NCBI GenBank assembly: GCA_965112155.1
Contig: OZ218101.1
From: Podarcis liolepis
Lineage: Eukaryota
DNA: 64,000 nucleotides
Reading direction: 5' to 3' (one strand)
The notes under the pieces are model-generated. The model worked only from the letters and a program-made list of their open reading frames with translations. It was not told where the DNA came from and ran no database searches. Positions 750 through 60,899 of the stretch are shown in pieces; within the stretch, counting starts at the first letter, position 1, and each line of letters opens with the position of its first letter. Both the position numbers and the translations under genes were made by a program.

Positions 750-1132
750 CAGTGTTTCCCAAAGTACTTCCCCCATGGACCACTTGAAAATTGCCAAGGA
801 TCTTGGCAGACCACTTCTTCTGCATACTGTAGCAATTGTAATGTGCTATGCTAGATGCTGTATAATTTTATTCTATTTTATTTGGCTTCTTGTATTTATT
901 TTATATTGTGTTTTGTTGCATTCCATAGAATTCACACTGTAATACAATGAAATATAATGTGAGAATTAAAGGAAGCAATAAAAACACAATTAAAAAAAAA
1001 TCATTATTACTATTCAATGCGATGGATGTGCCAGTTCCCAACTTCAACCTCTAATCTACAGACACACTGCAGACCACCTAAATGAAGCTTGTGGACCACT
1101 GGTGGTCCACAGACCACAGTCTGGGAACACTG
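750..1132. mobile_element. Non-autonomous hAT-like DNA element
   Basis: TIR cagtgtttcccaaa / tctgggaacactg; subterminal GGACCAC repeats. Confidence 0.65.
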
Positions 1133-4413: not shown

Positions 4414-5988
4414 AGCTTAGACAGAATTTCTGCTTCAGTCTGTTGCCTGATCAAAAACATTTGCTTATATTAAGAACTGCTTGCTTGGAAAAACTCACAC
4501 TTCCATGCATTCAGCTGTGTTATTACATTTATAAACCTTAAGGCGGTATCACTTCCTTCTCTTTAAAGCAGCACAGTAATTTAAGAAAGTGGTTATGCTT
4601 ATCTTCTGCCAGTCAAGCACTTTGTGCATTAACAAAATATAATTTTTCCCTTCGGCAGATGGGCGTGTGTGATGTACTTCACATATGTCAATATTAGTAG
4701 TCCTCCCCAGTAGGTGATGGAGCTACTTTATTTAGCAGGGTGCATGACTGGAAGTAAAAGGGGGGGAAAACCCATTTACACTTTAATGAGTAGCGACAAT
4801 GCAGCATGTCAAAGTCATGTACTCATTGCACTTTAGGAATCAGCATTATACAATTTTGCACAGGAAAACCACATTAAAGTACCACTCTTAAAGGAAATCT
4901 AGCATACCATAAAGGTTGCAAAAATACTCCTTGTATGAATGCCTAGTGGCATTTTGTACAGGAAGGTCCAATCAAGGTGAAAAGAAGCAGATCACCTGAT
5001 GGTTTGTTAGTGCAGAGATAATATATGTATCTATGACAGTCTCTTTCATTAGCTTTTCAACTTGTCAAACAATAAATGCAACCTTTGACCTCATGTATGT
5101 CTTGAATAAAGCTTGAGAAGTCTGAAATATCTCACTGGTAGAACACCTTGATTGATATTTTGGCTAACTTTTTAAACTTTCAATTAAAATACATAATTAA
5201 ATATGAAGGAAGGAACTATGACAAATGCTGCATTGTAAAGAAAATACAGTGCAGTAATTGTTCGCTAAAACACTGTTGGTTAAAGTGGGCAATTGGATAT
5301 ATTGAACAAAAAACAGAAGCCACATTTTATAGCTGTCAATTTTGGACTTTTCTTTACAGCAACAGTGAAATGCCTTGTATATTGTCCTGATTTCTAGGTC
5401 CTTAATGTTCCAAAGCACTATTCCCGAGGCTGTTTTGACTAATTATAGAAATAATTACCTACTTTGAAAGTACATTTATAGGTCACTTCCTAGAAAAAAA
5501 GAGGGAAGGAAATTCCTTGTTTTAGGGCAAAAGTGCACAAAAAAAGAATATGTGTGCGCATGTCTATGTATTCTAAACCTTTTTTTAAAAGCATTTATAA
5601 ACCACTTAACAGATAAAAATCCTAGCATCGTACAGAAATGCAATAAATAAAACCCAGTAAAACAGTGTTATAAAAACAGATAAAAAGAGGAACTCAGTAA
5701 TAACAAGTCCAATCTTAAATTAACAAGGCAGATGACTGGATATTTGTTGGATTTTAACGAATTACTCCTTCAAACTAAACTTCAAAAATTGCCAAGAACT
5801 GTGAAAGCATTTAGCAGTCGCCTTATTCACTGCTGTGCTTTTTAGCCCAAACAGAGAGGTGAAATTGACAACTAGTAGTCAAAATGCACATTCCTCTTTA
5901 TACAAAACTAGAATCCCTTGCACTTAAGAGTACATAACTAAACATCTCTGTTCAGTTCAATGGAGCTTTACTCCCAGATAAGTGTATA

Positions 5989-7655: not shown

Positions 7656-8840
7656 TAATGGGTATATGGGTGTGGGGTTTTTTGGGTTTGTGTGATACAC
7701 ACAAACACACATATACACACGCTCTCTCTCGCTCTCTCTTTCTGCCATAAGCTAACAAGATGGGAAATTAAATTCTAACCTAAGATCACTGTGCAAATGA
7801 AACAATACAAATCATGAGGATAATACAATCCTATTGTATTACTGTAATTTATTTCAGTGATAATTATTCCCTAGTTAAATGTACACAGGAGAGAAGCCTA
7901 AACAGAGCAGCAACACACCAACATCAACAAAATCCAAAGCTGCAGAGGAAGGGAAATAAACATTTTCTGAAACTTTTTAAAAACATAAATTGAGCAGGCT
8001 AATTGGATCTTGCTGGTGAGAGAATACCGTAGCACAGAGTGATCCTCAAAAAGCCGTGTTCCTGATAGACTACAATCCCATAGCAGATAGTGATGGCACC
8101 TGATTTTTAACACCATAATGAAATTAAGTCTCAGATAGGGAAAATACATTAAACTTCATTCAAAAATTATTAAAACAATAGGAAACTCTATCTGCCTTCT
8201 GTATCATAAACTATTTGGTACAGTAGATGTGCTGCAGATGTAGCAACCATAACTTCATTTACAACGTATCTTAGGTTATTTTTTCATAAAGGATATTAAT
8301 TTAAGCAAATCAATGCTTTACATGTACAAGAAGCAACTACCAAAATGCAGAACTGTTTGGGACCTTTCAGTGAACTCAGGTTCTTACAAACAGCAATAAC
8401 TCTTTGGGAAATACAGGGAGTTAAATGTTCTGGTGGACCACATTCCTCCAAAGGAACAGCACATTACACTAAGTATTCTTGGACACCTGCACACATGCCA
8501 ATTCAGTGAGTCAAAGCTGACTCATACATTACCAAACTTTCTATTTCCTCTTACACCTATCCACTTTTACTTGGTTTCCATCCAATTTTCAGGTTTGGCA
8601 AGTCTCATTAGCTTATGAAAACTTATGAAACCATAATCAGAAATACAGTTAGGGAACCAAATTAATTTATCTGTTTTTATAAGAAGGATTTTATTTCCCT
8701 CTATCCCAGCAGGTTATGAATTAATTTCTATTTGTTTTTGTGTGGTCTAGGAAAGCACATGAAAAGTGTGCTTCTCTACACAGTTGGATCTAATGAAAAA
8801 AATCCTTATAACTTTTTCACACTGAACTTAATGCAACTGT

Positions 8841-9502: not shown

Positions 9503-10036
<534 letters not shown>

Positions 10037-10471: not shown

Positions 10472-13439
10472 TATATACATGTAAGCTCTGTGCAAAAGAT
10501 CCAATGGACACGTTGAGATCAGAATGGGACCACTCCCTCCTCCCTCAACAGCCATTCACTCTACCCTGTTTGGTCACTTGCAAAGGACTTGAATGCAAAT
10601 CTCAGATACAACACCCTAAGACCTGTGAGCATCTCCAAGCTTAATGCAGCTCACAACCCCTGTTTTGCAGCCTGTCATGTATATTAGACACACGCACACC
10701 CTTTTCTCAATCCTAGGGAGGCATAAAATCAGACCTTTTCTTTGCAAGGTAAGCTTAACGAATTGCAGGTTATACAACCTTGCATTCTTTAGCAACACCT
10801 CACACATTTAGGCAATGCAAACGTTTTAGCACTCTTGATATGATGCAGTTCCATCAGAAGAAACAGTTGGAGAGCCCATGTCAGGACCAGCACACAGACA
10901 ACGGAATCTGCACAGCTTACTTTGTGTGTGCATCTGTTGGGGGAAAGGAACTTGCTTCCCTTACTCTGTGAGACATCAGGCATTGCAGTTGCCTGCGGCA
11001 CAGCACTAAGCCAACCAGGAGAGGTTTAAAAAGGAATTTGTTTTTCCCCCATGCAGTCCTTAGTTGTTTGTACATAAGACTTTTCATAGATTTATTCCTT
11101 ATCCAAATAATGAATTGTAGAAATGCAAACCTCTATTGGTGTATGTTTTACCTTTACTGAAGGAGCAGATTTTCCTTCAACTAGGCTTATAGAGATTAAT
11201 GTTAAAGGCTGAATATTAAATATTGCAAGCCTATGACACTAATCTACTTGAACAATAAAAACTGAGGCACAGAAAATGAGATCTCAGAAATACTGGAATA
11301 TGTTTCTTCATTAAAAATAACTTTTTAATTAAACCATCCAATTTAATGTTTTTATATGGCACTTCAGTCTTGAAGGNNNNNNNNNNNNNNNNNNNNNNNN
11401 NNNNNNNNNNNNNNNNNNNNNNNNNNNNNNNNNNNNNNNNNNNNNNNNNNNNNNNNNNNNNNNNNNNNNNNNNNNNNNNNNNNNNNNNNNNNNNNNNNNN
11501 NNNNNNNNTGTGCTTGTCTACTTCTTCACACTTTACAGACATTTTGTCATCTCTAGGTCATTAGGAAAGAATTTTTAATGGTTTTTCTAGATGCAAGCAG
11601 TTCAAGTTACATCTAATTAGATGACAATAATAAGCCCAACACATGCAGTAGCTAAATATATACATAATTAACCAGTGAGGGCTTGTACATCACAGAGTAA
11701 AAAAGTGGAAAATGCTAAGTGGAGAGGGAAGAAGTAGGGCTGAATTCGTTACCTGAATATGTCAATTTTCTACTAACATGTTAAAAATACTTTCCATCCG
11801 AAAGAAAGAGAATATTGTTCACCCTTTTTAGTGTATGATTTTCAGCTAACTATATGTGTGAATATTCATTTTTACTAATTAGAGTTTTAACATTTTATAT
11901 GTTTTAGTTAAGAAATACTTTCCACCTCTTATAGAATATCATTTACAACCAAGTCTGCATGCTCTTCTTCCACATTCATTATTTTCTGTTGTGACATATG
12001 AGGTATATTATTTTTTATTTTATCTATATCTATATCTATATCTGAAGCATGATTAACCTGCTACCTAAAAACAGATGCAAGTACTGCAGTAAGACATAAT
12101 TCTGGCTGCTAGACTGAACCACCTGACTCTTCCATCTTTTCCAGTGTAAGGATCTTTTATTAATATTATAGTAATTAAAGTGAGAGCGTACTGTTCTTTT
12201 TAATTGCTTATTACATATAGCACCTTTCATTTTCTAGTGAGAAAAGTGGTGCTGAATCAGTAAAAGTAGTGATTTCTCCTTCTCCTCTCTATAAATCAGG
12301 GGATTCCTGAGAATTGTGCAGAGTCAGAATTTTATAAATAATTCTGACTCTGCTCAATTCTCAAGAATTCCCAGTCAGGAAGTCCTACGTCTACAAAATG
12401 AAGACAAAAGCCAGGGGCAGGCAGAGTATAAAACTTAGACTGACTGATAAGTAGCAGAGTGCCATGTTTACCTTTGGAAAAAGAAAAAGAAACCACACAG
12501 CGCTGTAAACATGATGAAATATGTCCAGTGACAAGAGGGGCAGAGAAGAGGTGAAGACCTTGGGAGCAGAACGAAGTAGAGAGAAAGCAACTGGGTATGC
12601 TTGTCAAAAGAAGAGCTTTCAGACTCCGAACAACCATTTTGACTGCAAACTACAGATACAGTTATGGAAGCCTTACTTTTAGCAACTTCCTTGCTGGTTT
12701 GTTATTGTTATTTTATTAGTGAATAGATTTTGCAGTTCTTTGATTGATTTAGAGCATTATTTTAAAATGGATGAGATTAGTATATGAGGAACGTCTGCAA
12801 ATCCATTAAGATTAACTAGAGTGCAATCCTATTCTTATTTATGAAGAAGCAAGCCCACAATGGGGCTTACTCCCAGTTAAATATGTGTAGGATTGCAGCC
12901 TAAGCCCCTCTAAACTCAGTGGCACTTACTTCTGAGTAGACATATACAGGATTACACTGTAAATCTCCTAAAGCTCTAATCTGTAAACATATTATTATAT
13001 TCCTATTCTGCTTTGTGAACAGATTAAGAAAGACTCATGTAGTGAATCTCATTTTTGCATCAATAACTTCTATTGAGCTCACTGAATACAGATTTAGATC
13101 TGGTCCCTAACCATTATTACCATCCATGACAGCTATGTTACTTACTCCTTTATCATCAAAACTTTATTTGATGAGGAGTGTAACTGCATCAAGAAGGTGC
13201 TTAACTCCCTCAAACAAATGGATAGGCAAATGGAAGGAAGAAGGAATAGCTAGCAGTAAATGTAACACATTTTTGTTTTTAAAGGTATCCACAGAAAATC
13301 CAGAATCCATGTCAAGCTAGTTAGCTTAATGTGTATGGGTAAACTGGTGGAAAGCATGAATGAAGGAAAATATCAATCATATAGAAAAACAAGTCTTGCA
13401 TAAGATGAAATAACATGGTTTCTGCATATACAAGTCCCA

Positions 13440-25189: not shown

Positions 25190-28100
25190 AACATCAAACA
25201 ACACAACACCGTTGTTAAATAACGTATTGCCCTTGTTTGCCATTCTAAATCTTCCGAGGGCTAAGGTGATCTACCAATGTGAATAAGTGGTATGGTAGGT
25301 CTTTTTTCATTTGTACTTGCATCTGAGTATCCCACCACACAGACACAGAAAAAACAGAGTGCCATCCTAGCCAGAGTGCCTTGTTTCCCATTTTCCTCTA
25401 ATGTGGCTTCTGACACACTTGTGTGCTCTCCATAACGTGAGCTTACGACTGAGCGTGCTAGGAGTGGTTAGAAAGTTAAGATCCAAGAATTGAAGCAGCC
25501 ACATTCGGAGTCCTTTGGGTCTTCTCTCACGGCCATAATTAATACTAGTAATGGAATCGTTTCGCCCAAGGCAATGAAATAAAAACTGATCCTAGAACTA
25601 TAAGTGAATCCTTCCAATGTTTGTGATCTGTTAAAGAGCTTGCATTCCCTCCTCTCCGCCTATTATTAGCCAGCATCCATCTCATTGCTGATTGCCATTC
25701 CCCTGTGGCTCTTTTCTGGCCATACCCTGTTGGCAAACATAAGGGTATTGTGTGCATATGGCTAAAGATGGCTCTCTTATCTGACACACATATCCTCAAA
25801 TAAGCTAGTATCCACATACCCACAGGGTGGGGGAGGGGGATGTGCAAGTCCCAAGCTAAAAATAATTGTAATGTCTAATCTTTAACTTTTTAGCATCAGG
25901 CTAGGTTGCTTTCACAGCAGCCTTCTAGAGAAAATCCAACACACGCCAGATGACAATTGCAAACTAATCCCTTTCCTGCTTTCGATTTCTTTTTATGAAC
26001 TGCAAAAGCAAGGTCCAAGAGACAGCCTCTGATGCACCTCAAGTCCAGTACATGCCTTTCAAACCTAATCAAGAGGGTGTAAAAATGTATATGGAAAGAT
26101 GAAAGTGTCTTTGCCTTTGTAACATATGGCAAAAAAGCAGGAAAAGGCTGAAAGAGATGTTCCATAGGGGAAGGTTAAGTCTGATGCTAATGCTTATTTA
26201 AAATGGTGACAGTCTGGAGTAGTGAAGCCTTGCTGGGCTGCTTTAATTTCTCTCTGGAATAGCTTTCTCCCAACCTTCTGCAGCACATCAAAGTCTCTGG
26301 AGCTCAATTAAAATTGGATTATATTGAAATGCTCTGTCTATGGGACTGTGTGCTCACTAACACTTTTCTTTCGGTAATACTGCAGATGACAGTTGCCCAT
26401 CCCAATTTAAACAGTTGTCATAGAGACCACAAACTAAAGCAGCAGTAACTAACAATACAAAGGAAAGGTAAGTGCTCGGATTTCTATGAATGAAGGGGTT
26501 GGCTTTCAGCTGCATTGGATATACCACAAGCCCTTAAATGCAGCTAACATAAAAGGCTGTAATATGCCAAGCAGCTTGGCAGAGAGAAGCAAAGTAAACG
26601 ATTCAAGTAAAGAATTTCATTTGCGCCTAGATAGCAACCCTGTAATTAGACAAGCATTTTGTATGTGGCTATTCTTCCACTACTTAAAATATCCAAAATT
26701 AATAGACTCTCTCTAAGGATCAGTACTGAAGGTGGGATATAGACAATAGCCAGCAGTCAGTAAATTGAAGAAGTTAATAATTACTTTCTAATTACCAGTT
26801 TAACATAATTGGAGTAATTACTAGGCACAGTAAGGGATTATTCTGTTATTTAATAAAAACAGAAAACTTTGTTTCCATGTGAATATGTGAAATGGGGAGC
26901 ACCTTCATGCAATTCCATGAAAATTGAAATATAAACAGAGATTAGACTTCTTTGTATCATTTTATTAGTAAGATGTCCACTGAGAAAACAGAGGCTTATT
27001 TTATATGAGATTATATCCTGAGCTATTCCATAGACTCAAGTCAGATAATCATGTTATTCAACACAATGTTCATGATGTACAATGTAAATATAAAACATTT
27101 TAAAATAACCCATCTAAATGGGTATGTGATCAGACCTAAATAGATTTTAATTTAAAATCTTGCTTAATGTTATTATATTGCTTCAAAGATTGTCGACATT
27201 TTATATATAAAAAAATCCCTGTTCTGGCACTTTTCAAAAAAGCAAAATACTGTTATGAAGACAGCTTATATTTCTGGCAGCCATGCAGAGCAATACATTT
27301 GACAGCATAGATTGCAAGTAATGATATCATGTTCTCATGTAAATGGCATGTTTCTGGCACCATAAAAACTCACGACTTTTCTTGTAATTGGCTTACTCAG
27401 AGTCCCAAGGTTTTCTTCCCCTTGTCATTGTGCTGATCACCATGGAAATGAACAATTACTGTTAGTTTACTGTATGGCTCTATTTTTCTTTAAAGCCCTG
27501 GGTAAGCATGCTCCGTGCTCTCTTGGGGNNNNNNNNNNNNNNNNNNNNNNNNNNNNNNNNNNNNNNNNNNNNNNNNNNNNNNNNNNNNNNNNNNNNNNNN
27601 NNNNNNNNNNNNNNNNNNNNNNNNNNNNNNNNNNNNNNNNNNNNNNNNNNNNNNNNNNNNNNNNNNNNAACAAGAAAGGCCCCTACAGCTTGAGCCTNNN
27701 NNNNNNNNNNNNNNNNNNNNNNNNNNNNNNNNNNNNNNNNNNNNNNNNNNNNNNNNNNNNNNNNNNNNNNNNNNNNNNNNNNNNNNNNNNNNNNNNNNNN
27801 NNNNNNNNNNNNNNNNNNNNNNNNNNNNNNNNNNNNNNNNNNNNNNNNNNNNNNNCCTGCCAGCTGGAGAGTTCAGCCCCAATCTAATCACACCACCAGA
27901 AAATAACTTTTCATGCTTTCAGTCTGAAAAGATGGGCTCAAGAAAAGGGTGGGTGGGGGAAGACTGAAACAATGCCATTTGCTTCAATTGCATATTGTTC
28001 TCCAGAAAGAAATTTTAAAAGAACTTATCAGCAAATGCATTCATGCTAATTAATATTAACAGAGCATTGAATTGGCCACAGAGGCTGACCAATAACAGAC

Positions 28101-30489: not shown

Positions 30490-30655
30490 CACCAACCTTT
30501 AGCAGCTATTTGAGAATGTCGACAAGCACATGGATAGGGTTGATCTGATAGACATTATATAGTTGGACTTTCAAAAACCTTCAGATGAAGTCTTCACTGA
30601 AGGCTGTTGAGTAAACTTAACACTCATGCAATAAGAAAATTACAAGTCCTCCAAT
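30490..30655 (+). mobile_element. Degraded CR1 RT fragment
   Basis: gacattatatagttggactttcaaaaaccttc resembles DIIYLDFQKAFD. Confidence 0.55.
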
Positions 30656-30685
30656 ATTTTAGGAACACGTATCAGGAAGTAGTGG

Positions 30686-30688
<3 letters not shown>

Positions 30689-30728
<40 letters not shown>
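30689..30728. repeat. (AT)20 microsatellite at left end of PLE cluster
   Basis: Direct reading. Confidence 0.98.
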
Positions 30729-30731
<3 letters not shown>

Positions 30732-30774
30732 AGTTTTGGTGTCTTCGGGTGTCTTCCCGTGTAAGAGTTGGGGT

Positions 30775-30824
30775 GTCTAGGCGACGTTTCGACGAGGTCT
30801 CACTCGTCATCTTCAGGCTGGTGC
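30775..30824 (-). ncRNA. Minimal type I hammerhead ribozyme motif in PLE 3' repeat (copy 1)
   Basis: CUGAAGA-U-GACGAG-ugagac-CUCGUC-GAAA-C-GUC. Confidence 0.75.
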
Positions 30825-31041
30825 TTACGGCTTCTTGTTACTGGAACAGAGCAGGATCTCAGTGTTTGAGTTCCTATAAATACTGTTGAGGGGGTGTGGT
30901 GTATTCTGGGCAGAGAGGAAGTTCCCAGGATAGTGTGACTTTTCTTCTTTTGTTCCTTAATTACTTGAGGGATATCTTGAGTGATTTCTTGAGTGATATT
31001 CTGAGTACCACTTAGGAGGGTCATTAAGAGTGGATTAGTTG

Positions 31042-32300
31042 CTAAAGCTTTCGTGTCTTGACCTCTTGAGCTTGTGAAGAGTTTTTCTGAGAAGATGGCT
31101 GTACTGCACTTAGTTGTGCTCTGGCTTGGCTTCGTGTATACGCTTCGTGTATACGCTTGTTCATGTTGTGAGGGTGTTTCTCTATCTCGATGGCTTCCAT
31201 GATTATTCTCTTGTGGTGATGTTCCATGTTAAAGAGCAATTTGGAATCTGCAAAATTAATTTCGTGTCCTGTTTCTTTCATGTGTTGGAAAAGAGAGGAA
31301 GTTTTTTCTTCTTTTTTGACGGCATTCTTGTGTTCTGCGATACGTGCATTTATTCGTCTGTTTGTTTGTCCAATGTACGTGGCTGGGCAGACTTTGCAGG
31401 GTATTTCATAGACCCCTTGGTTTTCCAACTGGATTTTATCTTTGGGGTTTCTGAGGATATTGGCTATTTTTTGGTTGGTGCAAAAGGCTGTTTTGATATT
31501 GTGTTTATGGAGGATTTTGCTAATTTTATCTGTAGTGCCCTTGATATAAGGAAGGAGGGCCATGCCATTGTTTTCTTCTGTGTCTTGGTTTTTGGGGGGT
31601 GTTTCTTTTTGGATTAGCTTCGTAACCCTGTTTTGCTGGTATCCATTGGCGATTAACACATTTGAGAGATTCTGTAACTCAGTTGTCAAGTGGTCTTTGT
31701 CAGCCAGGCGTTTGGTTCTGGAGATGAGAGTCTTGGCTACGGAGTTTATTTGTGCAGGGTGGTGGTGTGATTGTGCATGTAAGTAGCGGTTGGTGTGTGT
31801 TTTTTTCCGGTAGATGGTGTGTCCTAGGGAGCCATCAGGTTTTTTGTAGATTAGGACGTCAAGGAAGGGAAGTTGGTTGTTGGCTTCTATTTCCATAGTG
31901 AATTGTATTTTGGGGTGTAGGCTGTTGAGATGTGTGAGGAAGCTATCTAGTTTTTCTTTCCCGTGTGGCCAAATTACAAAGGTGTCGTCAACATATCTGA
32001 GCCAAAGTTTGGGTTTGTGTTCTGACTTGTCTAAAGCATTGGTTTCAAAGTGTTCCATGTACAGATTTGCGATGACCGGTGAGAGGGGTGATCCCATAGG
32101 TGCTCCTTCTATCTGTTTGTATCTTTGTCCATTGTGGATGAAGTACGTGTTGGTTAGGCAGTGGTTGGTCAGGTCCAGGATGTATTCGGGGGGATTGTAT
32201 TTGTTTTGGATGGCTGTCAAGGCTTCATTAATGGGCACTTGTGTGAAGAGAGATACAACATCGAAGCTCACAAGTAGGTCATCGGGATGTAGGTTTTGCT
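31042..32300 (-). CDS. Penelope-like RT (partial) + GIY-YIG endonuclease, 5'-truncated open frame
   Basis: About 420 codons without a stop, with RT motifs and a C-terminal GIY-YIG containing CxxC. The N-terminus is cut by the inversion junction, so the annotated Met is artefactual. Confidence 0.88.
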
Positions 32301-32930
32301 TCTTTAACATGGAACATCACCACAAGAGAATAATCATGGAAGCCATCGAGATAGAGAAACACCCTCACAACATGAACAAGCGTGACGACACGTCCCGCCT
32401 GCCAGACATCTGGAAATTAGCCCTCCCCACAAAAACCGACACCAGAACCAGAGGCACACAGAACGCCATCACCAATCAACCACACCAGACCCAAACCCAG
32501 ACCCTCTCCACAGATAAATTACAGACACCATCCAGTAGCCAAACCATAGTGGCACCTCCGGATGCTACACCCCCCTGCAATCCCTACACAGATCTGACTG
32601 GCACAGCTCGCCCCTATACACGAAGCCAAGCCAGAGCACAACTAAGTGCAGTACAGCCATCTTCTCAGAAAAACTCTTCACAAGCTCAAGAGGTCAAGAC
32701 ACGAAAGCTTTAGCAACTAATCCACTCTTAATGACCCTCCTAAGTGGTACTCAGAATATCACTCAAGAAATCACTCAAGATATCCCTCAAGTAATTAAGG
32801 AACAAAAGAAGAAAAGTCACACTATCCTGGGAACTTCCTCTCTGCCCAGAATACACCACACCCCCTCAACAGTATTTATAGGAACTCAAACACTGAGATC
32901 CTGCTCTGTTCCAGTAACAAGAAGCCGTAA

Positions 32931-32980
32931 GCACCAGCCTGAAGATGACGAGTGAGACCTCGTCGAAACGTCGCCTAGAC
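32931..32980 (+). ncRNA. Minimal type I hammerhead ribozyme motif (copy 2)
   Basis: CTGAAGA at 32939-32945, 6-bp stem II 32947-32952/32959-32964, GAAA 32965-32968, GUC cleavage triplet 32970-32972. Confidence 0.75.
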
Positions 32981-33056
32981 ACCCCAACTCTTACACGGGA
33001 AGACACCCGAAGACACCAAAACTTGCATTCCTGTACCCGTGAAAATCTACGAAAGC

Positions 33057-33080
33057 ATATATATATATATATATATATAT
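33057..33080. repeat. (AT)12 spacer between the two PLE units
   Basis: Direct reading. Confidence 0.98.
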
Positions 33081-33156
33081 GCTTTCGTAGATTTTCACGG
33101 GTACAGGAATGCAGGTTTTGGTGTCTTCGGGTGTCTTCCCGTGTAAGAGTTGGGGT

Positions 33157-33206
33157 GTCTAGGCGACGTTTCGACGAGGTCTCACTCGTCATCTTCAGGC
33201 TGGTGC
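33157..33206 (-). ncRNA. Minimal type I hammerhead ribozyme motif (copy 3)
   Basis: Same core as copy 2, on the reverse strand. Confidence 0.75.
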
Positions 33207-34752
33207 TTTCGGCTTCTTGTTACTGGAACAGAGCAGGATCTCAGTGTTTGAGTTCCTATAAATACTGTTGAGGGGGTGTGGTGTATAGCCTCCAACGTTC
33301 TGGGCAGAGAGGAAGTTCCCAGGTTAGTGTGCCTTTTCTTCTTTTGTTCCTTAATTACTTGAGGGATATCTTGAGTGATTTCTTGAGTGATATTCTGAGT
33401 ACCACTTAGGTGGGTCATTAGGTGTGGATTAGTTGCTAAAGCTTTCGTGTCTTGACCTCTTGAGCTTGTGAAGAGTTTTTCTGAGAAGATGGCTGTACTG
33501 CACTTAGTTGTGCTCTGGCTTGGCTTCGTGTATAGGGGCGAGCTGTGGTTTTGTGCCCTGTGCCAGCCAGATCTGTGTAGGGATTGCAGGGGGGTGCAGC
33601 ATCCGGAGGTGCCACTATGGTTTGGCTACTGGATGGTGTCTGTAATTTATCTGTGGAGAGGGTCTGGGTTTGGGTCTGGTGTGGTTGATTGGTGATGGCG
33701 TTCTGTGTGCCTCTGGTTCTGGTGTCGGTTTTTGTGGGGAGGGCTAATTTCCAGATGTCTGGCAGGCGGGACGTGTCGTCCTTATATCAAGGGCACCACA
33801 GATAAAATTAGCAAAATCCTCCATAAACACAATATCAAAACAGCCTTTTGCACCAACCAAAAAATAGCCAATATCCTCAGAAACCCCAAAGATAAAATCC
33901 AGTTGGAAAACCAAGGGGTCTATGAAATACCCTGCAAAGTCTGCCCAGCCACGTACATTGGACAAACAAACAGACGAATAAATGCACGTATCGCAGAACA
34001 CAAGAATGCCGTCAAAAAAGAAGAAAAAACTTCCTCTCTTTTCCAACACATGAAAGAAACAGGACACGAAATTAATTTTGCAGATTCCAAATTGCTCTTT
34101 AACATGGAACATCACCACAAGAGAATAATCATGGAAGCCATCGAGATAGAGAAACACCCTCACAACATGAACAAGCGTGACGACACGTCCCGCCTGCCAG
34201 ACATCTGGAAATTAGCCCTCCCCACAAAAACCGACACCAGAACCAGAGGCACACAGAACGCCATCACCAATCAACCACACCAGACCCAAACCCAGACCCT
34301 CTCCACAGATAAATTACAGACACCATCCAGTAGCCAAACCATAGTGGCACCTCCGGATGCTGCACCCCCCTGCAATCCCTACACAGATCTGGCTGGCACA
34401 GGGCACAAAACCACAGCTCGCCCCTATACACGAAGCCAAGCCAGAGCACAACTAAGTGCAGTACAGCCATCTTCTCAGAAAAACTCTTCACAAGCTCAAG
34501 AGGTCAAGACACGAAAGCTTTAGCAACTAATCCACACCTAATGACCCACCTAAGTGGTACTCAGAATATCACTCAAGAAATCACTCAAGATATCCCTCAA
34601 GTAATTAAGGAACAAAAGAAGAAAAGGCACACTAACCTGGGAACTTCCTCTCTGCCCAGAACGTTGGAGGCTATACACCACACCCCCTCAACAGTATTTA
34701 TAGGAACTCAAACACTGAGATCCTGCTCTGTTCCAGTAACAAGAAGCCGAAA

Positions 34753-34802
34753 GCACCAGCCTGAAGATGACGAGTGAGACCTCGTCGAAACGTCGCCTAG
34801 AC
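34753..34802 (+). ncRNA. Minimal type I hammerhead ribozyme motif (copy 4)
   Basis: CTGAAGA at 34761, GAAA at 34787-34790, GUC at 34792-34794. Confidence 0.75.
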
Positions 34803-34848
34803 ACCCCAACTCTTACACGGGAAGACACCCGAAGACACCAAAACCTGC

Positions 34849-34866
34849 ATATATATATATATATAT
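34849..34866. repeat. (AT)9 at right end of PLE cluster
   Basis: Direct reading. Confidence 0.97.
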
Positions 34867-35490
34867 AAATTTTCATTATAAAAAAAGAAACATACAAAAC
34901 AAACATCATATTTTTCACCAACTTCATCTTTTTGACTCCCCTCAGCCTTTCTGATGATTCTTCGTTCTATTTACTTCTTCCACATTTCTCACATAATATT
35001 GCACTACCTTAATATCTTATTTACCCCCCCTTTTTTTTTACAATATTTCTACCTTACATTTTCACAGAACTTCCCGAAAACCTACAAACGTTGTTTGATT
35101 ATCACATAATGTTTGCATATACTCTGTAAATTTAGTCCAGTCCTCAGTGAATCTCTGGTCACGTCGATTCCGGATCCTTCCTGTTAATTTATCAAGTTCC
35201 GCGTAATCTGTCAATTTCATTCTCCATTCTTCAATCGTAGGCAATTCTTCTTGTTTCCATTTTTGGGCCAACAATATTCTTGCTGCTGTTACTGCATATA
35301 AAAACAACTTCCATTCTTTCTTATTAACTTCATTTCCTATTACACCTAGTAAGAATGCTTCTGGTTTCTTAACAAATGTATATTTCACAATTTTTTTCAT
35401 CTCATTATATATCATCTCCCAAAAGCTTTTTACTTTTTTACATTCCCACCACATATGGTGAAATGTTCCTTTTCCCCCCTTACATTTCCA
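34867..35490 (-). mobile_element. L1/Tx1-clade LINE 3' fragment (ORF2 C-terminal Cys/His-rich region + 3' UTR)
   Basis: WKCKGGKGTFHHMWWECKKVKSFW motif, an open frame to the stop at 35062, then an AT-rich 3' UTR ending at the (AT)n tract. Confidence 0.8.
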
Positions 35491-41195: not shown

Positions 41196-43687
41196 TTAAC
41201 TCTAGGGGAGAACCCTGTAAACTGATTCACAGCCAGGTTTAGTCAGATTTGTATACTTCGATAGTAACTTCCAAGCTTTGAGCTTTTGGATGAATTGCAT
41301 TATGACTAACTAGTAATACTGATCTTCAGAGTAACTATACTCCTTATAATTTTTCAATGGCTGCATCATATTATTAAATCATTCTTAAGAGTGAAAATCA
41401 TTCTTATTGTGCTTCGATTCTTGCCTTTCAACTGTTATTAGCATTAATATTACGGAGCTTAGGCTACCCTTTAAGTCAGAAGTGGCACATTCAAGAGGAA
41501 CTGGCACAGACCTTGGAGCTACATTTACAAGGGTAAGGAAAAGCACAATTCCCAAACCCCTTCAACATACCACATAGAGAAGAGCTTCATATGAAAGCCT
41601 ATTTAAGAGAAGAGATTGCAACAAAGAAAAGGCCTACAAATAGCTTTATGATGGTGCTGCAGGAGTACTTTATGGAAACTGAGTAGTGTCTAAAAAGTGC
41701 CCTGTCAGTTTTCAGCTCCCTCTTGCCAGCTGCATTAAAATGCGGCTCTGGGCAATTTTTTTTTTTTTGTCTGGAATTNNNNNNNNNNNNNNNNNNNNNN
41801 NNNNNNNNNNNNNNNNNNNNNNNNNNNNNNNNNNNNNNNNNNNNNNNNNNNNNNNNNNNNNNNNNNNNNNNNNNNNNNNNNNNNNNNNNNNNNNNNNNNN
41901 NNNNNNNNNNNNNNNNNNNNNNNNNNNNNNNNNNNNNNNNNNNNNNNNNNNNNNNNNNNNNNNNNNNNNNNNNNNNNNNNNNNNNNNNNNNNNNNNNNNN
42001 NNNNNNNNNNNNNNACAGCCCACTTTCACTGGCCGTTCTTTGAAGATTATTGTCACTGACATCTTGAGGATGCGTTTGGAATCTGGAGCATCATTTCCGT
42101 TGCGATGGGGAATTACACTGACTTATCTGTCATTGCCAAAAGCACAACAAGCAATTCAGTGTTAATGCAAAGGTAACACAGGTTTTTATCATGCCGCCAG
42201 AACAAGAGCTCTTGTGAATTTATGCTAATATGGCCCTTTTATACTTTAATAACCTCCTCCCTTACTGGAAAAAAAAGTATTAATGCATGCATGCACTTTC
42301 CCTTCCTCTCTTACTCACACACATACACACACATACACACTGTTAGTTTGATAATCTATGTCATAGTGTGGTAAGTAATTTGTAGATGATCCTCTTGTAA
42401 TTATTTATTGCAAATCTTTTTATGAATGCTAATCTCATAGAGTTACAGCAGATTGCTAGTTCTATTCAATATGGAGAAGTAGTGAGAACAACCATGTCTT
42501 ATTTCTTGCAGCTAAAACAATCATTGAAATGATTCTTGCTATGCTGTTTCTGGTTTTTTCCACCAAAGTTAAGTGCGGGATTTTTTGATTTTTTTTTTAA
42601 ACGGCTTCCAAAGCTCTCTCTGATTGCTGATTCAGTTTGCTTTCCTCATCAAGAGAATCAGGAATACTACAAGCGAGCAGTTCGCCTTGATCCAGGGTGG
42701 CATTCCAGAGGGACCAAGGCTATCCAGCATGCATGCCAAATCTGACAACACATGACAAGCCGGTCGGCGTGCAGTAATTTGACTAATTATACTGGATTAG
42801 AGCATATTAATGCAAGCTGTTTTCTCCAGAGTTAATGACCTGCTGACTGGGTTCTGTAAGGCCCCACTAGGTCTACAGACAGCTAAAAAACAAAACCTTG
42901 CCTTCTAAGCCCTCGTCATTTCACATCAGCAAATGAGTATATCAAACTACTGAGCAGCAAAATGTAAGCGACATTTTGTCTGCTACAAACTCATGTATCC
43001 TCCCTTAGCTTTCCACCTCAAGGGTTTCTTTGATATAAAATTAAAATCTGCTTTTTGCGGGTCTGAAAAATACTACCCAAAAGCAGAGGGAGAAATTGCT
43101 TTCTAGATGTTTATTTGTCAAGTTAAAGGAATAGTGGAGGGTGTTAAATATATAGAGAGACAAATTACTAGACGACATAACTGTGAGACATAGTTTATAA
43201 ATCTTTCCTTTACATGATTCTTTTTTATTACACAAAATGGATCTATTACCTATAGATATATATGAATAACAAGGAAATGGCTTTTCCATCTATGTCACTC
43301 TGTTTAGTTGCTTATACAGTTTTGGAAATTATTATTTATGGCTGCAATTTTCTTTTTTTCTTTCTTTCCTAGAGGTGAACTCTTTGTAAATAGTTGGCAG
43401 TTCATAATAATCTGGACAGCATTATGCAATAAATGGCAGCATCCAATGTATTTATTGATTTATTTAGATATTTAACCAAACCCTTCTCTAAAAGGTCCAG
43501 AAAGGTAACAATAAATGATAAAATAACATTTTAAAAGATAAATACAATTTAATATCACCACAGTGCTAACCATCTTCCAGTCACAAAATAACTGTACAGT
43601 ACTAGTTTTCAAACTTACTTACTTGACACACACACAGAGCGAGCGAGCAATGTATTTTGTCACATTTTATATGTTTGGTTATAAGGT

Positions 43688-48081: not shown

Positions 48082-48215
48082 GATAGCTTAGTTGGTAGAG
48101 CATAAGACTCTTAATCTCAGGGTCACGGGTTTGAGCCCCATGTTAGGTAAAAGTTCCCTGCATGCCAAGGGGTAGGACTAGATGACCCCGTGGTCCCTTC
48201 CAACCTTATGATTCT
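48082..48215 (+). mobile_element. Short tRNA-Lys(CTT)-derived SINE with CR1-like 3' tail
   Basis: tagcttagttggtagagcataagactcttaatctcagggtc...gagcccc head followed by a gactagatgacc...ccttccaac...atgattct tail. Confidence 0.75.
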
Positions 48216-51200
48216 AAGAATTCTAAGTGTTGAGACACATTTAATCAGGAAATGCTTCTTCTCTTGTAGATGCCATAATGAAGTGCCAATGGCAACCTTT
48301 TTGAAATCAACTCTCAAGGAAACATTTTTTAAACAACAACAACAACAACCAAGTGATGGTGGGGAGGAACTACTTTGGGGAAGATTAACAGGCAAAGTTT
48401 AAAATTCCATATATCATTTCAGGTCATAAGGCAGCCAAATGAATAAACTGATCTTACTTAAACATATTCTCAGCTAGCATCACCTTACAGATCCTCATGC
48501 GCTCAGTGATTGTTCATTTCTTTCTTTTTTAAACACATGGGTGCTAAACTCGTATCAAACCTTAAAGCAGAGGTCCAAGTATCAGTGTATAAGTCTCGAA
48601 TTTAGTGAACAGCACATATTTACACCATTGTAATTAACTCACAAGTAAAGTGTATAAAAATGAACAGCTGTGAATAAAAGTTTGCAGCAGAGCCTCAACG
48701 AAGCATTTAGCTGGTGTTGTCTACACTCAGCTCTAGTGGAAAAGAGTAAGCTGCCCCCCCCCCCAAAAAAAAGGGCTGCTGAGAATTTCAAACCATATTG
48801 TACAGAAGTCACATCAAATTAATACTGAGGACCATTTAGAGCTTTTATTCTGAAAAGCTTTTTGAAAAGGGATTAAACTATGAAAACTCGCATGATACTA
48901 AAGTACCTATTAATGGGTTTAGAAGGGGGGGGGAGGAACAATGAAAGTGTTATTTTTAGATAAATCGTTACTTTGTATGTAGCAGCACAAAGCATTTGCT
49001 AAGGAGATACGGCAACAGTTCTCTGGCAATATCCCACACATCTGAACACTGATTAGCAGGAGTCTTTTTGTTGTCGTTAAGAATAATCTTCTGTGAAAAC
49101 GGGGTCTTACCCATTCCCCCCTTTCCCCCTCCCGCCATGACAATTTTAGGAGTTTCACTTACACTCTTGGGCAAAACATGAGAAAGCCAAGGCAATGGAA
49201 CTGCTTAACGGGAGACAAAAATGCAACCCGATGAAAGTATAAGGTGGCTGTTCTGTCTTCCTCATCCTACCAACACAGTTGGCCCAATTATATGTATAAT
49301 CTGAACTAGTCTGTATATCATACATCTCCCCAAGATCCCCTACCACTGTTATTTTAAAAGTTTCAATTGTATGATACCCCTAATGTGCAGGAAAATGGTG
49401 TGTTATTTATATATATATATAGCCAGAAAACAGCATGAGCAACGAGAAGAAGGAAGCTGGGTAGCTGTCATCTCGTCAAAAATAATGAATTCTCAAGAGA
49501 CTTCTAACTTTATGTCTTCCCAGTCATTTGTCCAATAACAATAGGCTACCAGGAGAGAAATGAGTAGGCGTAGAGCACACACTACTTCGGCTCTGGCTCG
49601 CACCTGTAACCCCCAAACAACTATGTACCAGCTGAAACCTACAAGACAACTGGCCCAAAAGACAACTGGAAATGTTGTTCCTAGCCTGCTGTGCCTCCAT
49701 TCAGTTAAAGGATGCACCACATGGTGGATGACAGCTTTGTGTCTATCCCGTCTTGCAGCCTTCCCTTCCCCCAGCCCCTTGACAGTCATGCNNNNNNNNN
49801 NNNNNNNNNNNNNNNNNNNNNNNNNNNNNNNNNNNNNNNNNNNNNNNNNNNNNNNNNNNNNNNNNNNNNNNNNNNNNNNNNNNNNNNNNNNNNNNNNNNN
49901 NNNNNNNNNNNNNNNNNNNNNNNCTTTTGCCCAAGGAAGACCAATTTACAAAAGGCGTCCACTTTGGCTGTGGGACACCAAAGAACAAGCAATGAACTGC
50001 AGCTGTCACTTAAGTTAAAAATCTAATCGATTGCTTTTTTAAAAAGAAGAAGAAGAAAGGTAACTTTTTGAACAGCTTCTTCTTTGTGCAACCCTTTGGA
50101 GTGTGTTTGACCCAAATTTAATAAGCCGTTCTTAAAGCAGAAGAGCAGCTGTACAGCAAACCTTGTGGAATGATACTAGTGTGTTCGGCGTCTTAATTAT
50201 TTTAAAATGATTACAACCACTGCTTCATTCAAGAGGCAGAAAGCTTAGAGCTCTTTGCCCAACAATGTCTTAACACAAACTGTCTGAACAGGCAGCATTC
50301 ATTCGTCCTTCATGAACCCCAAAGGTCAGCTGCATTGCTGAAAACAACTCAGCAGTTTAATTGTGTTTCTTCTGAAGAGAGAAAGGGAGGGGGGCAAAAA
50401 CTTGAGGATTCATCCTCTGTGTGAAAACTAGCCCCCCCTTTTTTTATTTGCAAGGAAATATACAGCTTAAGTACAGAGACAAGGAGTGCATGATATGCAG
50501 ACAGGTGTAAAACATGAAGTAATTATAGAAGCTCAAATTAGTTCCTGGGCCTGAGGCAAAAAAGAGAACAGTGCCTTGACAAAAGGGAATANNNNNNNNN
50601 NNNNNNNNNNNNNNNNNNNNNNNNNNNNNNNNNNNNNNNNNNNNNNNNNNNNNNNNNNNNNNNNNNNNNNNNNNNNNNNNNNNNNNNNNNNNNNNNNNNN
50701 NNNNNNNNNNNNNNNNNNNNNNNNNNNNNNNAGAGGCAGGCATNNNNNNNNNNNNNNNNNNNNNNNNNNNNNNNNNNNNNNNNNNNNNNNNNNNNNNNNN
50801 NNNNNNNNNNNNNNNNNNNNNNNNNNNNNNNNNNNNNNNNNNNNNNNNNNNNNNNNNNNNNNNNNNNNNNNNNNNNNNNNNNNNNNNNNNNNNNNNNNNN
50901 NNNNNNNNNNNNNNNGTGGTACTCCTTTTGTGTATAGGCACTTTAGAAGTGCTGCCAAAACCAAAGAATTGACACCATAATAAAACAATTTGAATTTCAA
51001 CCAGGTAAATACTAGGCTTTCCAAGGGAGGAGGGAGCAGAGTGTAAGCACTACATCCATTTCATCTTATTTGAAATAAAGCTATGGGACTCTGACTTGAG
51101 ACTACAGCAAGCCTATTTTTCTCAGTGCAGGCCTCTTGGATGCCATATTGACAGGCTGCTAATTAATATAATTTAATGGACAAGATCTAAGATCAAGAAT

Positions 51201-60600: not shown

Positions 60601-60899
60601 ATGAACAGCTTGGAAACCGCTGTCTCACGCACATGGAGTTCTTTAAGTGCTTGCCACACACCTCTAGCTGTCTTGATTCCCCTCACATACGGCAACTGGG
60701 AATCTTCCAGCCCCAAGACAATTGTGGCCCTTGCTCTTTGGTCTTTATCGAGGTCTTCATCATCAGGCTTCGTAGGAAACTTACTCACCACTTGCCAGAG
60801 ACGATCCCTCTGCAGCACTGCCTGCATGCGTTCCGACCACAGCAAGTAATTGGAGTCATTCAGACGCTCAAAAGCCATCTGAACTGGTTGTGAGGCCAT
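57624..60899 (-). CDS. Copia gag-pol polyprotein (Gag, CCHC knuckle, protease, integrase, RT), interrupted by a frameshift near its end
   Basis: CFRCGSSAHLKRQC knuckle; VDSGAS protease; HRKMGH..CNVC and VHMD/TDRGGEF/NGVAERKNR integrase; GKGF motif; YKARLVAQG and YVDD RT motifs. Confidence 0.95.
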   Translation of the reverse strand: MASQPVQMAFERLNDSNYLLWSERMQAVLQRDRLWQVVSKFPTKPDDEDLDKDQRARATIVLGLEDSQLPYVRGIKTARGVWQALKELHVRETAVSKLFIRKALYKAMLQPGVTMQEHLHSLQLKFVALQERDCALDQQEKVAIILSSLPESWDNLVLSLEGIQERDLSVSYVTGRLIEEWQKRQERSLAAEASTGGRFGRSSHAVPEVTQKQRTGEESAFAVRRCFRCGSSAHLKRQCPELVKSQLPVQEQRRDQQQQQRKKKFFKRKQSAQLVTAKVKIADEKQAVWVVDSGASRHIINSDELFVSKNSAQRSQVALADGSTSEVISGGAVFVPCLRECLQNVLCVPSLRSNLMSVDCLLKAGFKVYFEGDSCIIKKAGEILGTAKSEGGLFWLKAGSQVAAVVSKSQPAVNNKAIHDNCVHLLHRKMGHACWKSVLKMSELADGGNLKSCNKYLDCNVCKKVKTHRVSYPRSDRVSESPLQLVHMDVIGPFAVSRGGLRFSLTIVDDATRYSWVFPMKNKGDVFTKFKGWVASAERFLSVKLKRIQTDRGGEFMSNAFKDWLQKRGIGHRKTNVFSPEENGVAERKNRSLQDMMFAMLADADLPMSYWGESMLTACYLQNRLFHQTIGTTPYFKLFQKKPKIDHLHVFGSKAWVLIPKQMRKKGDPKTKQLVFVGYQELGKGFRFAEGTNGIVISRNASFCEHSGWERLHANTEVWFEPSQELHDSEGRHRESESEGEESSDKSSQESGVSQSPVAKQQKRGRSSEEESGSEEKFSPRRSKRQNKGVPPVRFSPDTANVFSVIAEPKSFQEVLKLPKEEAELWKQAMEEEMSSLNEHKVFTPVAAPEGAKIVGCRWVYKLKPLVTGEYKYKARLVAQGYSQRPGKDYDETFSPTAKGDSVRLILTLGAKRKLLLNHFDIQTAYLHASISEDLYLAEPPGYETGSNRVLKLNKALYGLKQAARSWNKCFHEALVSFGFKQSTADNCVYVRGTGSDQEFCLIYVDDVLYACKTDKQTKRFAKQLSSKFKVKDLGPVRTYLGLEVCWAQDGSCLISQQNKVKQLLTTYRMQDCKGAAVPMDPGFIKNTSYR

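What the first reader, a model, noticed from the sequence alone, without database searches (positions are those of the whole stretch)
30775..34802. Four minimal hammerhead ribozymes with a loop-less palindromic stem III, two on each strand
Seen: each PLE 3' repeat carries CUGAAGA-U-GACGAG-UGAGAC-CUCGUC-GAAACGUC. This has the hammerhead core, an extra U after A9, a perfect 6-bp stem II and a GUC triplet. Stem III is only the palindrome ACGU with no loop, and stem I has about 2 clear base pairs. Known: Penelope-like elements carry minimal type I hammerheads that are thought to act as dimers. Inference: a monomer cannot fold, but the double insertion places two same-strand copies in one transcript. 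The minus-strand pair (30775 and 33157) lies in the NBEA pre-mRNA, and a plus-strand pair also exists, so a cis dimeric self-cleaving unit may have been created inside a host intron.
Basis: partly seen in the sequence, partly recalled or inferred. Interest (0 to 1): 0.8.

Follow-up and report, generated by a model that had tools for sequence, protein, structure and literature searches.

The report
Known Penelope-element hammerhead motifs, four copies
Four identical copies of the small self-cutting "hammerhead" RNA motif that Penelope-like jumping genes always carry sit in two mirror-image insertions in a lizard intron-like region. The motif is genuine but already described, and nothing indicates it cuts the host RNA here.

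Summary
The 34-nt motif occurs four times, all identical: 30783-30816(-), 32939-32972(+), 33165-33198(-) and 34761-34794(+). None is expected by chance.

[quoted passage not shown] - Stems I and II covary across families (about 88-90% paired against 17-44% in slid controls).
- The extra nucleotide after A9, the G10.1-C11.1 pair and the loop-less ACGU stem III are family traits published in 2014 (PMC4209133).
- The same layout was tested biochemically in Anolis in 2024 (PMC11167929).

The four copies come from two independent insertions into one (TA)n tract. Each insertion made a mirror pair of 5'-truncated arms.

The new inference, a cis-dimeric ribozyme acting in the host pre-mRNA, is not supported.
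- In a read-through transcript of either strand, every sense copy is predicted to pair fully with an antisense copy (-66.6 kcal/mol). The dimer contact is worth about -3 kcal/mol.
- RNA reads show no pile-up of ends at the cut sites and almost no depth in the flanks.
- The host gene and its strand could not be checked.

This scan has noted PLE hammerheads many times elsewhere in this genome (111 notes). Verdict: real, ordinary, already known.

The parts
30783..30816 (-). Hammerhead copy 1 (arm A-). With stem I it spans 30779-30820. Predicted cut between 30783 and 30782. AUG at 30810-30808 = A9-U-G10.1.
   Evidence: 31 bits, E 6e-6
32939..32972 (+). Hammerhead copy 2 (arm A+). Predicted cut after 32972. 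AUG at 32945-32947 opens the frame MTSETSSKRR...
33165..33198 (-). Hammerhead copy 3 (arm B-). Predicted cut between 33165 and 33164.
34761..34794 (+). Hammerhead copy 4 (arm B+). Predicted cut after 34794.
30729..32306 (-). Arm A-: 5'-truncated PLE copy holding the C-terminal part of the reverse transcriptase and the GIY-YIG endonuclease (frame 31042-32310). It ends 54 nt after the cut site, has no tail, and carries a 231-nt internal deletion relative to arm A+ with 12 filler bases at 31141-31152.
   Evidence: in other copies the sequence runs on past 32306 (loose ends)
32301..33056 (+). Arm A+: 5'-truncated PLE 3' end. The body ends at 33026, 54 nt after the cut. The 30-nt tail is 33027-33056, ending 84 nt after the cut.
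   Evidence: I2: 414 nt, 100% complementary to arm A-
33057..33080 (.). Central (TA)n remnant of the target microsatellite between the two units. Matching tracts lie at about 30690-30728 and 34849-34867.
33081..33780 (-). Arm B-: the 30-nt tail (33081-33110) followed by the PLE 3' end.
   Evidence: I1: 672 nt, 100% complementary to arm B+
33779..34848 (+). Arm B+: 5'-truncated PLE copy with the GIY-YIG part. It ends 54 nt after the cut and has no tail.

Best explanation
The four motifs are intact copies of the minimal, dimer-dependent type-I hammerhead ribozyme found in the terminal repeat (pLTR) of Penelope-like retroelements, here of a lizard Poseidon-like family. In an active, tandemly arranged element the motif sits where the 3' end of one unit meets the start of the next. 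Its A9-U-G10.1 is the AUG of the element's reading frame. Two motifs on a multimeric transcript can pair through the ACGU palindrome into one shared 4-bp helix III and cut after C17. This cleavage is weak or protein-assisted and is thought to process element RNA (inferred from the literature, not shown here). At this locus the motifs are passengers. Two separate insertion events into one (TA)n tract each primed reverse transcription on both DNA strands. Each event left a mirror pair of 5'-truncated cDNA arms with their 3' ends, and so their hammerheads, facing outward. The template RNA was not cut at that motif, because both sides of the scissile bond were copied. In any read-through RNA of this locus the motifs are expected to be locked in long perfect double-stranded RNA and to be catalytically silent.
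For: Identity: the core and all family traits are present. A covariance model made from 10 hammerheads of PLE relatives found in metagenome contigs, without the window sequence, hits exactly these four places at 31 bits and E 6e-6; the next hits have E 0.16 and 0.61. Structure: with a descriptor that sets no condition on stem II, 20 of 26 distinct hits in 80 PLE loci have a stem II of at least 4 bp, and only in the register with one inserted nucleotide. Shuffles give 0.68 on average, 5 at most. On alignment A2, 87.9% of cells pair against 25-41% when partners are slid, 10 of 12 pairs change on both sides, and 0 of 500 shuffles reach the observed score. On 31 distinct model matches the figures are 89.8% against 17-44%. 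Stem I was in no descriptor and still covaries. Element: the frames hit RVT_1 and GIY-YIG, and the best relative is a Podarcis muralis protein at 90% identity. Two events: arms within a unit are 100% identical over 414 and 672 nt. Between units identity is 98-99%, and two indels of about 12 and 15 nt, seen as spacing shifts between repeat families and in the sequence, separate the units; their mirroring in both arms of unit B was read by eye. Ends: the arms stop 54 nt after the cut, or 84 nt with the 30-nt tail. In Anolis PAc the cut is at position 30 and the tail spans 85-119, that is 55-89 nt after the cut (PMC11167929). PAc extends both target strands in vitro. Silence here.
Against: No cleavage assay exists for this sequence. 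Stem I has only 2 contiguous pairs, at the low end of the 1-5 seen in relatives, so even the source element's motif may be weak. Minimum-energy folds ignore co-transcriptional kinetics and proteins. The RNA reads come from other copies of the family, in a run labelled organism B, not demonstrably from this locus (they carry fixed differences). They therefore say little about this locus itself. Ordinary RNA-seq is also not designed to capture 5'-OH or cyclic-phosphate ends. Rfam's hammerhead models do not report the motif.
Confidence: 0.9

Rival explanations
1. One reading: the two same-strand copies in a host (NBEA) pre-mRNA pair through ACGU and form a working dimeric ribozyme that cuts the intron.
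For: Two identical sense copies do lie on each strand, 2382 and 1822 nt apart. Bare 34-mers do adopt the dimeric hammerhead as their minimum-energy co-fold. Tandem or dimeric PLE hammerheads can cleave in vitro (PMC4209133; 1 of 9 Xenopus dimers in bioRxiv 10.64898/2026.07.22.740005).
Against: Every sense copy is predicted to be fully paired to an antisense copy in the read-through RNA. On either strand an antisense copy is transcribed before each sense copy. The dimer gain is about -3.1 kcal/mol (nominal Kd about 6.5 mM) against -66.6 kcal/mol for the antisense duplex. No excess of read ends appears and the flanks have almost no depth. With realistic flanks the co-fold prefers other contacts. 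The host gene and its strand are unverified.
Confidence: 0.04
2. The motifs are cut here only with help: protein from active PLE copies binds read-through RNA near the tail and promotes cleavage, as proposed for Anolis PAc.
For: PAc hammerhead cleavage in vitro needed the element's protein but not its endonuclease activity (PMC11167929). The family is transcribed, mostly in the element's sense direction.
Against: The same paper found no RNA-seq reads beginning or ending at the cut site in vivo, and neither did. The double-stranded sequestration applies here too.
Confidence: 0.05
3. The biologically relevant feature of the locus is the set of long perfect inverted repeats. These would form double-stranded RNA or DNA cruciforms and could feed small-RNA or editing pathways. 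The hammerheads would then be irrelevant.
For: There are inverted arms of 672, 414, 400 and 218 nt at 99-100% complementarity, one pair with no spacer. The predicted fold energies are -3218 and -3265 kcal/mol for the two strands and -436.9 kcal/mol for the central 436 nt.
Against: There is no evidence that the locus is transcribed through: flank depth is at most 0.1 in two RNA runs. The differences seen in reads run in both transition directions, as expected for diverged copies and not for editing. No small-RNA data were examined.
Confidence: 0.1
4. Chance resemblance to a hammerhead core in a repeated sequence.
For: Rfam release 15 gives no hammerhead match, even at E up to 10 on 81 nt.
Against: The independent model hits at E 6e-6. 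Both stems covary across families. The motif sits in a fixed position behind the frames encoding the reverse transcriptase and endonuclease. The Rfam models were not inspected; lack of a stem III hairpin in this motif is my inferred reason for the miss.
Confidence: 0.01

Closest known systems
min-HHR of metazoan Penelope-like elements (Cervera & de la Pena 2014, PMC4209133)
   Same: Type-I topology. No helix III loop. Palindromic 15.2-16.2. [quoted passage not shown] G10.1-C11.1 pair. Long helix II (6 bp here; 6-8 bp published). Short helix I. Location in the PLE terminal repeat. Pairs on opposite strands a few hundred bp apart. The paper reports it in fishes, coelacanth, Xenopus, turtle and snakes.
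   Different: The stem II and loop sequence is specific to this lizard family. Helix I has only 2 contiguous pairs, as published for Drosophila virilis, against 4-5 in the Schistosoma families.
Hammerhead of Poseidon PAc from Anolis carolinensis (PMC11167929)
   Same: The reading frame's AUG is A9-U-G10.1, at the start of stem II. Stem II has 6 bp. The motif ends GAAACGUC without a loop. The cut falls about 28-30 nt after the A of the AUG. An optional tail of 30-34 nt starts about 55 nt after the cut. The element inserts in AT-rich or (TA)n sites. Both target strands are extended.
   Different: Stem II has a different sequence (GACGAG/CUCGUC here), with compensating changes on both sides, and is one nucleotide shorter overall, so the coding frame through GAAACGUC is shifted by one. 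PAc was tested biochemically (C3G, G8C and the rescuing double mutant); this sequence was not.
Small PLE-associated hammerhead variants that cleave as dimers (Lunse, Weinberg & Breaker, RNA Biol 2016/17; cited as ref. 134 in PMC6765202)
   Same: An extremely short stem III, with activity through an intermolecular stem III between two copies.
   Different: The paper is not held in the library, so no detailed comparison was possible.
Rfam hammerhead families (type I, II, III, HH9, HH10)
   Same: The same catalytic core and three-helix junction.
   Different: No match at any threshold tried. The motif has no stem III hairpin of its own.

Membership tests
PLE minimal type-I hammerhead (min-HHR) | Conserved core: C3 U4 G5 A6 N7 G8 A9, G12 A13 A14, A15.1-U16.1, H17 | tested here: met
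   All positions are present in all four copies. The same columns are invariant in 11 aligned family members.
PLE minimal type-I hammerhead (min-HHR) | One unpaired nucleotide between A9 and G10.1 | tested here: met
   It is U here. In relatives stem II forms only in the one-insert register: the stem reaches at most 1 bp without it and is at least 4 bp in 20 of 26 with it. Counted by eye from the 22 distinct motifs listed, the inserted base is U in 10, A in 11 and C in 1.
PLE minimal type-I hammerhead (min-HHR) | Stem II closed by G10.1-C11.1 and kept through compensatory change | tested here: met
   G-C in 10 of 11 and G-U in 1. Five of six stem II pairs change on both sides, and 92-95% of cells pair.
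PLE minimal type-I hammerhead (min-HHR) | Helix III reduced to a palindrome (15.2-16.2, with or without a short palindromic insert) and no loop | tested here: met
   ACGU here. Relatives have CG (the majority), GC, CGCG, CATG or CCGG.
PLE minimal type-I hammerhead (min-HHR) | Open, short helix I (type I) with covariation | tested here: met
   2 contiguous pairs here and 1-5 in relatives. The three inner pairs are paired in 82-100% of sequences with 2-5 standard pair types each. This copy is at the weak end.
PLE minimal type-I hammerhead (min-HHR) | Sense strand of an element encoding a reverse transcriptase and a GIY-YIG endonuclease, in the terminal repeat | tested here: met
   RVT_1 and GIY-YIG hits. 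The motif starts 225 nt after the stop codon. In relatives 31 of 43 model hits lie on the strand of the reading frame. By subtraction of match ends from motif starts, they sit about 140-770 nt after the protein match or near or upstream of the start of the frame.
PLE minimal type-I hammerhead (min-HHR) | Scores as a member with a model built from other members | tested here: met
   Model R1, built without the window sequence, gives 31 bits and E 6e-6 for each of the four copies.
PLE minimal type-I hammerhead (min-HHR) | Self-cleavage after H17, dependent on dimer formation | not testable with these tools
   This needs in vitro transcription and cleavage assays. It has been shown for relatives only (PMC4209133, PMC11167929).
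Rfam hammerhead covariance models | Reaches the family's gathering score | tested here: not met
   No hammerhead match at the gathering score on the whole window, nor at E up to 10 on 4.4 kb or on 81 nt.
   All 34 nt of each sense copy are paired with an antisense copy in the minimum-energy fold of both strands. The energies are -66.6 against -3.1 kcal/mol.
   No place with an excess of read starts or ends, despite a mean depth of about 60-70 in the bin 33099-33245. The reads stem from other copies, and the library type is not end-specific.
   No exon is readable in the window. Flank depth in RNA runs is at most 0.1.

The most novel reading that the evidence does not exclude
During transcription of the host gene, before the long inverted arms zip up or with help from PLE protein or helicases, two sense copies 2.4 kb apart meet through the ACGU palindrome and cut the intron. 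The doubled mirror insertion would then act as a transposon-delivered self-cleaving module that lowers or reshapes the host transcript.
Probability: 0.03. Interest if true: 0.55.

Novelty: already known. Interest (0 to 1): 0.12.

Why it matters
It adds little. The case is a clean, well-resolved example of published biology: the minimal hammerhead of Penelope-like elements, its overlap with the element's start codon, the optional 30-nt tail, insertion into (TA)n, and mirror-image arms that fit priming on both target strands. Its main use is as a caution. An intact ribozyme core inside an intron is not evidence of host RNA cleavage when the same insertion also supplies a perfect antisense partner. 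The covariance model built here from unrelated PLE loci finds such motifs, which Rfam misses. It could be reused to sort the many similar notes in this genome quickly.

Tried and rejected
- Rfam models gave no hammerhead match at the gathering score on the whole window, or at E up to 10 on 4.4 kb and on 81 nt. The strong miRNA-model matches at 32984-33153 are artefacts of the perfect palindrome around (TA)n, and all are below their gathering scores.
Metagenome contigs carrying PLE relatives were used instead.
- Viral contigs held no relative.
- Protein N-termini of relatives were not informative, because the length window of the search cuts off full-length frames.
- The flanks of the N stretches were read for splice signals to get the host strand, and nothing clear was found. 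The N stretches themselves were not filled or looked up.
- The Lunse et al. paper is not held.
- Co-folding with realistic flanks does not give the dimeric hammerhead as the best structure. This shows only that the contact is weak.
Full report
**What is there**

No match occurred in 100 shuffles.

In hammerhead numbering it reads as follows:
- C3 U4 G5 A6 A7 G8 A9, then one extra U;
- stem II, GACGAG/CUCGUC, with the loop UGAGAC;
- G12 A13 A14, then A15.1 C15.2 G16.2 U16.1 with no loop, then C17.

The flanks then offer two contiguous stem I pairs, GC/GC. A relaxed descriptor run over the whole window finds only these four and one chance-like hit at 5035-5068. Shuffles give 0.46 hits.

**Context**

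The stretch 30729-34848 consists of four 5'-truncated copies of one Penelope-like element (PLE), arranged as two mirror pairs inside a (TA)n tract.
- Unit A is arm A- (30729-32306) joined head to head with arm A+ (32301-33026, plus a 30-nt tail to 33056).
- Unit B is arm B- (tail 33081-33110, then 33111-33780) joined with arm B+ (33779-34848).

The longer arms carry the C-terminal part of a reverse transcriptase and a GIY-YIG endonuclease (RVT_1 at E 1e-12, GIY-YIG at E 4e-4). The closest protein on record is from the wall lizard Podarcis muralis, at 90% identity. The next hits listed (about 45-80% identity) are from snakes, other lizards, insects, a lamprey and unnamed metagenome or assembly contigs.

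Within a unit the arms are 100% identical, over 414 nt in unit A and 672 nt in unit B. Between units identity is 98-99%. Two indels of about 12 and 15 nt also separate the units. They appear as spacing shifts between repeat families (2382 to 2394 and 1795 to 1810) and in the sequence. I read their mirroring in both arms of unit B by eye from the sequence. Each unit is therefore one event, and the two units are separate events in the same microsatellite.

Every arm ends 54 nt after the predicted cut. The shorter arm of each unit adds a 30-nt tail and ends 84 nt after the cut.

**Is the motif a real hammerhead of the PLE kind?**

Rfam gives no hammerhead match at any threshold, so I tested membership independently. 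A scan of metagenome contigs with an alignment of PLE proteins returned 80 loci that encode relatives at 34-58% identity.

I first used a descriptor that fixes only the core and a palindromic 15.2-16.2, and says nothing about stem II. It gave 26 distinct hits. Of these, 20 have a stem II of at least 4 bp, against 0.68 expected from shuffling the gap (5 at most in 2000 shuffles). The stem forms only in the register that leaves one nucleotide unpaired after A9.

Stem I was in no descriptor. It is 1-5 bp long in the relatives, with many different pair types.

On an ungapped alignment of the window motif with ten relatives:
- 87.9% of cells form standard pairs, against 25-41% when the partners are slid;
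- 10 of 12 pairs show changes on both sides;
- no shuffle in 500 reaches the observed covariation.

A covariance model built from the ten relatives alone, without the window sequence, finds exactly the four window copies at 31 bits and E 6e-6. The next hits have E 0.16 and 0.61. The same model finds 43 motifs in the 80 loci, 31 on the strand of the reading frame and 12 opposite, often as close opposite-strand pairs. On their 31 distinct sequences 89.8% of cells pair, against 17-44% in slid controls. That alignment is fitted to the model, so it leans towards the structure.

The condition the finding set for its own refutation, no conservation or covariation across PLE families, is therefore not met.

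**All of this is published**

Cervera and de la Pena (2014, PMC4209133) defined the min-HHR of metazoan PLEs. Their description includes:
- no helix III or loop 3 in a single copy;
- an extended helix III formed between two copies;
- the G10.1-C11.1 pair;
- palindromic 15.2-16.2;
- a long helix II and a short helix I (2 bp in Drosophila virilis);
- location in the terminal repeats;
- pairs on opposite strands 100-700 bp apart.

They report thousands of copies in vertebrates, including reptiles. They also found no cleavage by single motifs and only low cleavage by dimeric and trimeric constructs.

The Anolis Poseidon element PAc (PMC11167929) has the same layout as the window element:
- the frame's AUG is at the start of stem II (here A9-U-G10.1 at 32945-32947, opening MTSETSSKRR...);
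- the motif ends GAAACGUC;
- the cut is at position 30;
- an optional tail of about 34 nt spans 85-119, that is 55-89 nt after the cut, against 54 and 84 nt here.

That paper also reports the following. C3G or G8C abolish cleavage and the double mutant partly restores it. Cleavage needed the element's protein. The protein cleaves and extends both target strands, and reverse transcription starts at two internal sites that bound the tail. No RNA-seq reads begin or end at the hammerhead site in vivo.

The window element differs from PAc in the sequence of stem II, with compensating changes on both sides. The mirror pairs here fit extension of both target strands. This last link is my inference.

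**The new inference does not hold up**

Four points speak against it.
- Two sense hammerheads on one transcript is the normal state of tandem PLEs (PMC6765202). What is special here is that each sense copy has a perfect antisense partner in the same transcript.
- The minimum-energy fold of 30650-34900 (-3218 kcal/mol for the minus strand, -3265 for the plus strand) pairs all 34 nt of every sense copy with an antisense copy. The central 436 nt alone fold into a hairpin of -436.9 kcal/mol that buries copy 2.
- The sense/antisense duplex of the motif is worth -66.6 kcal/mol. The ACGU contact adds only -3.1 kcal/mol to two monomers, a nominal Kd of about 6.5 mM.
- On either strand an antisense copy is transcribed before each sense copy (sequence order).

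**RNA evidence**

I laid two raw RNA runs of a species labelled organism B, one possible RNA contig set and one likely DNA set on 30600-35000.
- The PLE family is transcribed. In run X23 the strand bias flips between the two arms of unit B, which fits RNA in the element's own sense direction and not read-through on one host strand.
- The reads carry fixed differences from the window, for example 62 of 63 reads at 33126. They therefore come from other copies.
- The unique flanks have a depth of at most 0.1.
- No place shows an excess of read starts or ends, although the bin holding copy 3 has a mean depth of about 60-70.

This agrees with the Anolis result. It is weak evidence for this particular locus, and the library type is not end-specific.

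**Limits**

- The host gene and strand (NBEA, minus) could not be checked. Earlier notes of this scan that place MAB21L1 and NBEA nearby are unverified.
- The Lunse et al. dimer paper is not held.

**Verdict**

The motif is real, and it is a member of the known PLE minimal hammerhead family. The four-copy layout comes from two ordinary mirror-image PLE insertions. The proposed host-intron ribozyme is unlikely, at about 3-4%. This scan holds 111 notes with the words hammerhead and Penelope. One follow-up in this genome (s1-847054) reached the same family assignment.

Noticed in passing
window 33144-33201 (loose ends): Other transcribed copies share the stretch from the hammerhead to the tail but diverge just upstream of the core. 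At least two different upstream sequences begin at 33199 and 33201. One variant carries changes inside GAAACGUC. This could mean other subfamilies or non-autonomous elements that share the terminal module, as proposed for animal retrozymes in bioRxiv 10.64898/2026.07.22.740005.
   Followed up: no
window 31141-31152: Arm A- lacks 231 nt that arm A+ has (32384-32614) and has 12 filler bases instead. The two arms are otherwise 100% identical. This may be a template jump during cDNA synthesis. It fuses the frame (...HPHNMNKR-IHEAYTRSQ...).
   Followed up: partly
window 32298-32310 and 33779-33780: The head-to-head junctions of the mirror arms. Unit A overlaps by up to about 10 nt around the near-palindrome CTTTAACAT/ATGTTAAAG. 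Unit B overlaps by about 2 nt. Full-length copies run on past 32306 (loose-end consensus, which matches the Podarcis protein).
   Followed up: partly
window 32984-33153: Many Rfam miRNA-precursor models match here (up to 89 bits), but all are below their gathering scores. They are caused by the perfect palindrome of two PLE tails around (TA)n. It is not a miRNA gene.
   Followed up: yes
window 9865-9922 and 48084-48141: Two partial tRNA-like matches (30.4 and 32.2 bits, just above the tRNA gathering score, model positions 8/9-63). They are probably tRNA-derived SINE heads.
   Followed up: no
window 11377-11508, 27529-27668, 27698-27855, 41779-42014, 49792-49923, 50592-50731, 50744-50915: Seven N stretches of 132-236 nt. 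Two pairs are separated by only 29 and 12 readable bases. The flanks show no clean splice signals.
   Followed up: no
L006, L013, L025, L040, L056 (metagenome contigs): Opposite-strand hammerhead pairs also occur in PLE loci of unrelated organisms. In L040 they lie at 616-657(-) and 804-845(+), and in L013 at 1579-1623(-) and 1796-1840(+). Mirror-image insertion therefore seems general for PLEs.
   Followed up: partly
L032:1795-1830, L033:128-160: Relatives with the U3-A8 core covariation (UUGANAA) instead of C3-G8, as described for Schistosoma in PMC4209133.
   Followed up: no
window 7945-7976 (+) and 60746-60770 (-): Weak partial matches to the PLE hammerhead model (E 0.16 and 0.61). They are most likely noise.
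   Followed up: no
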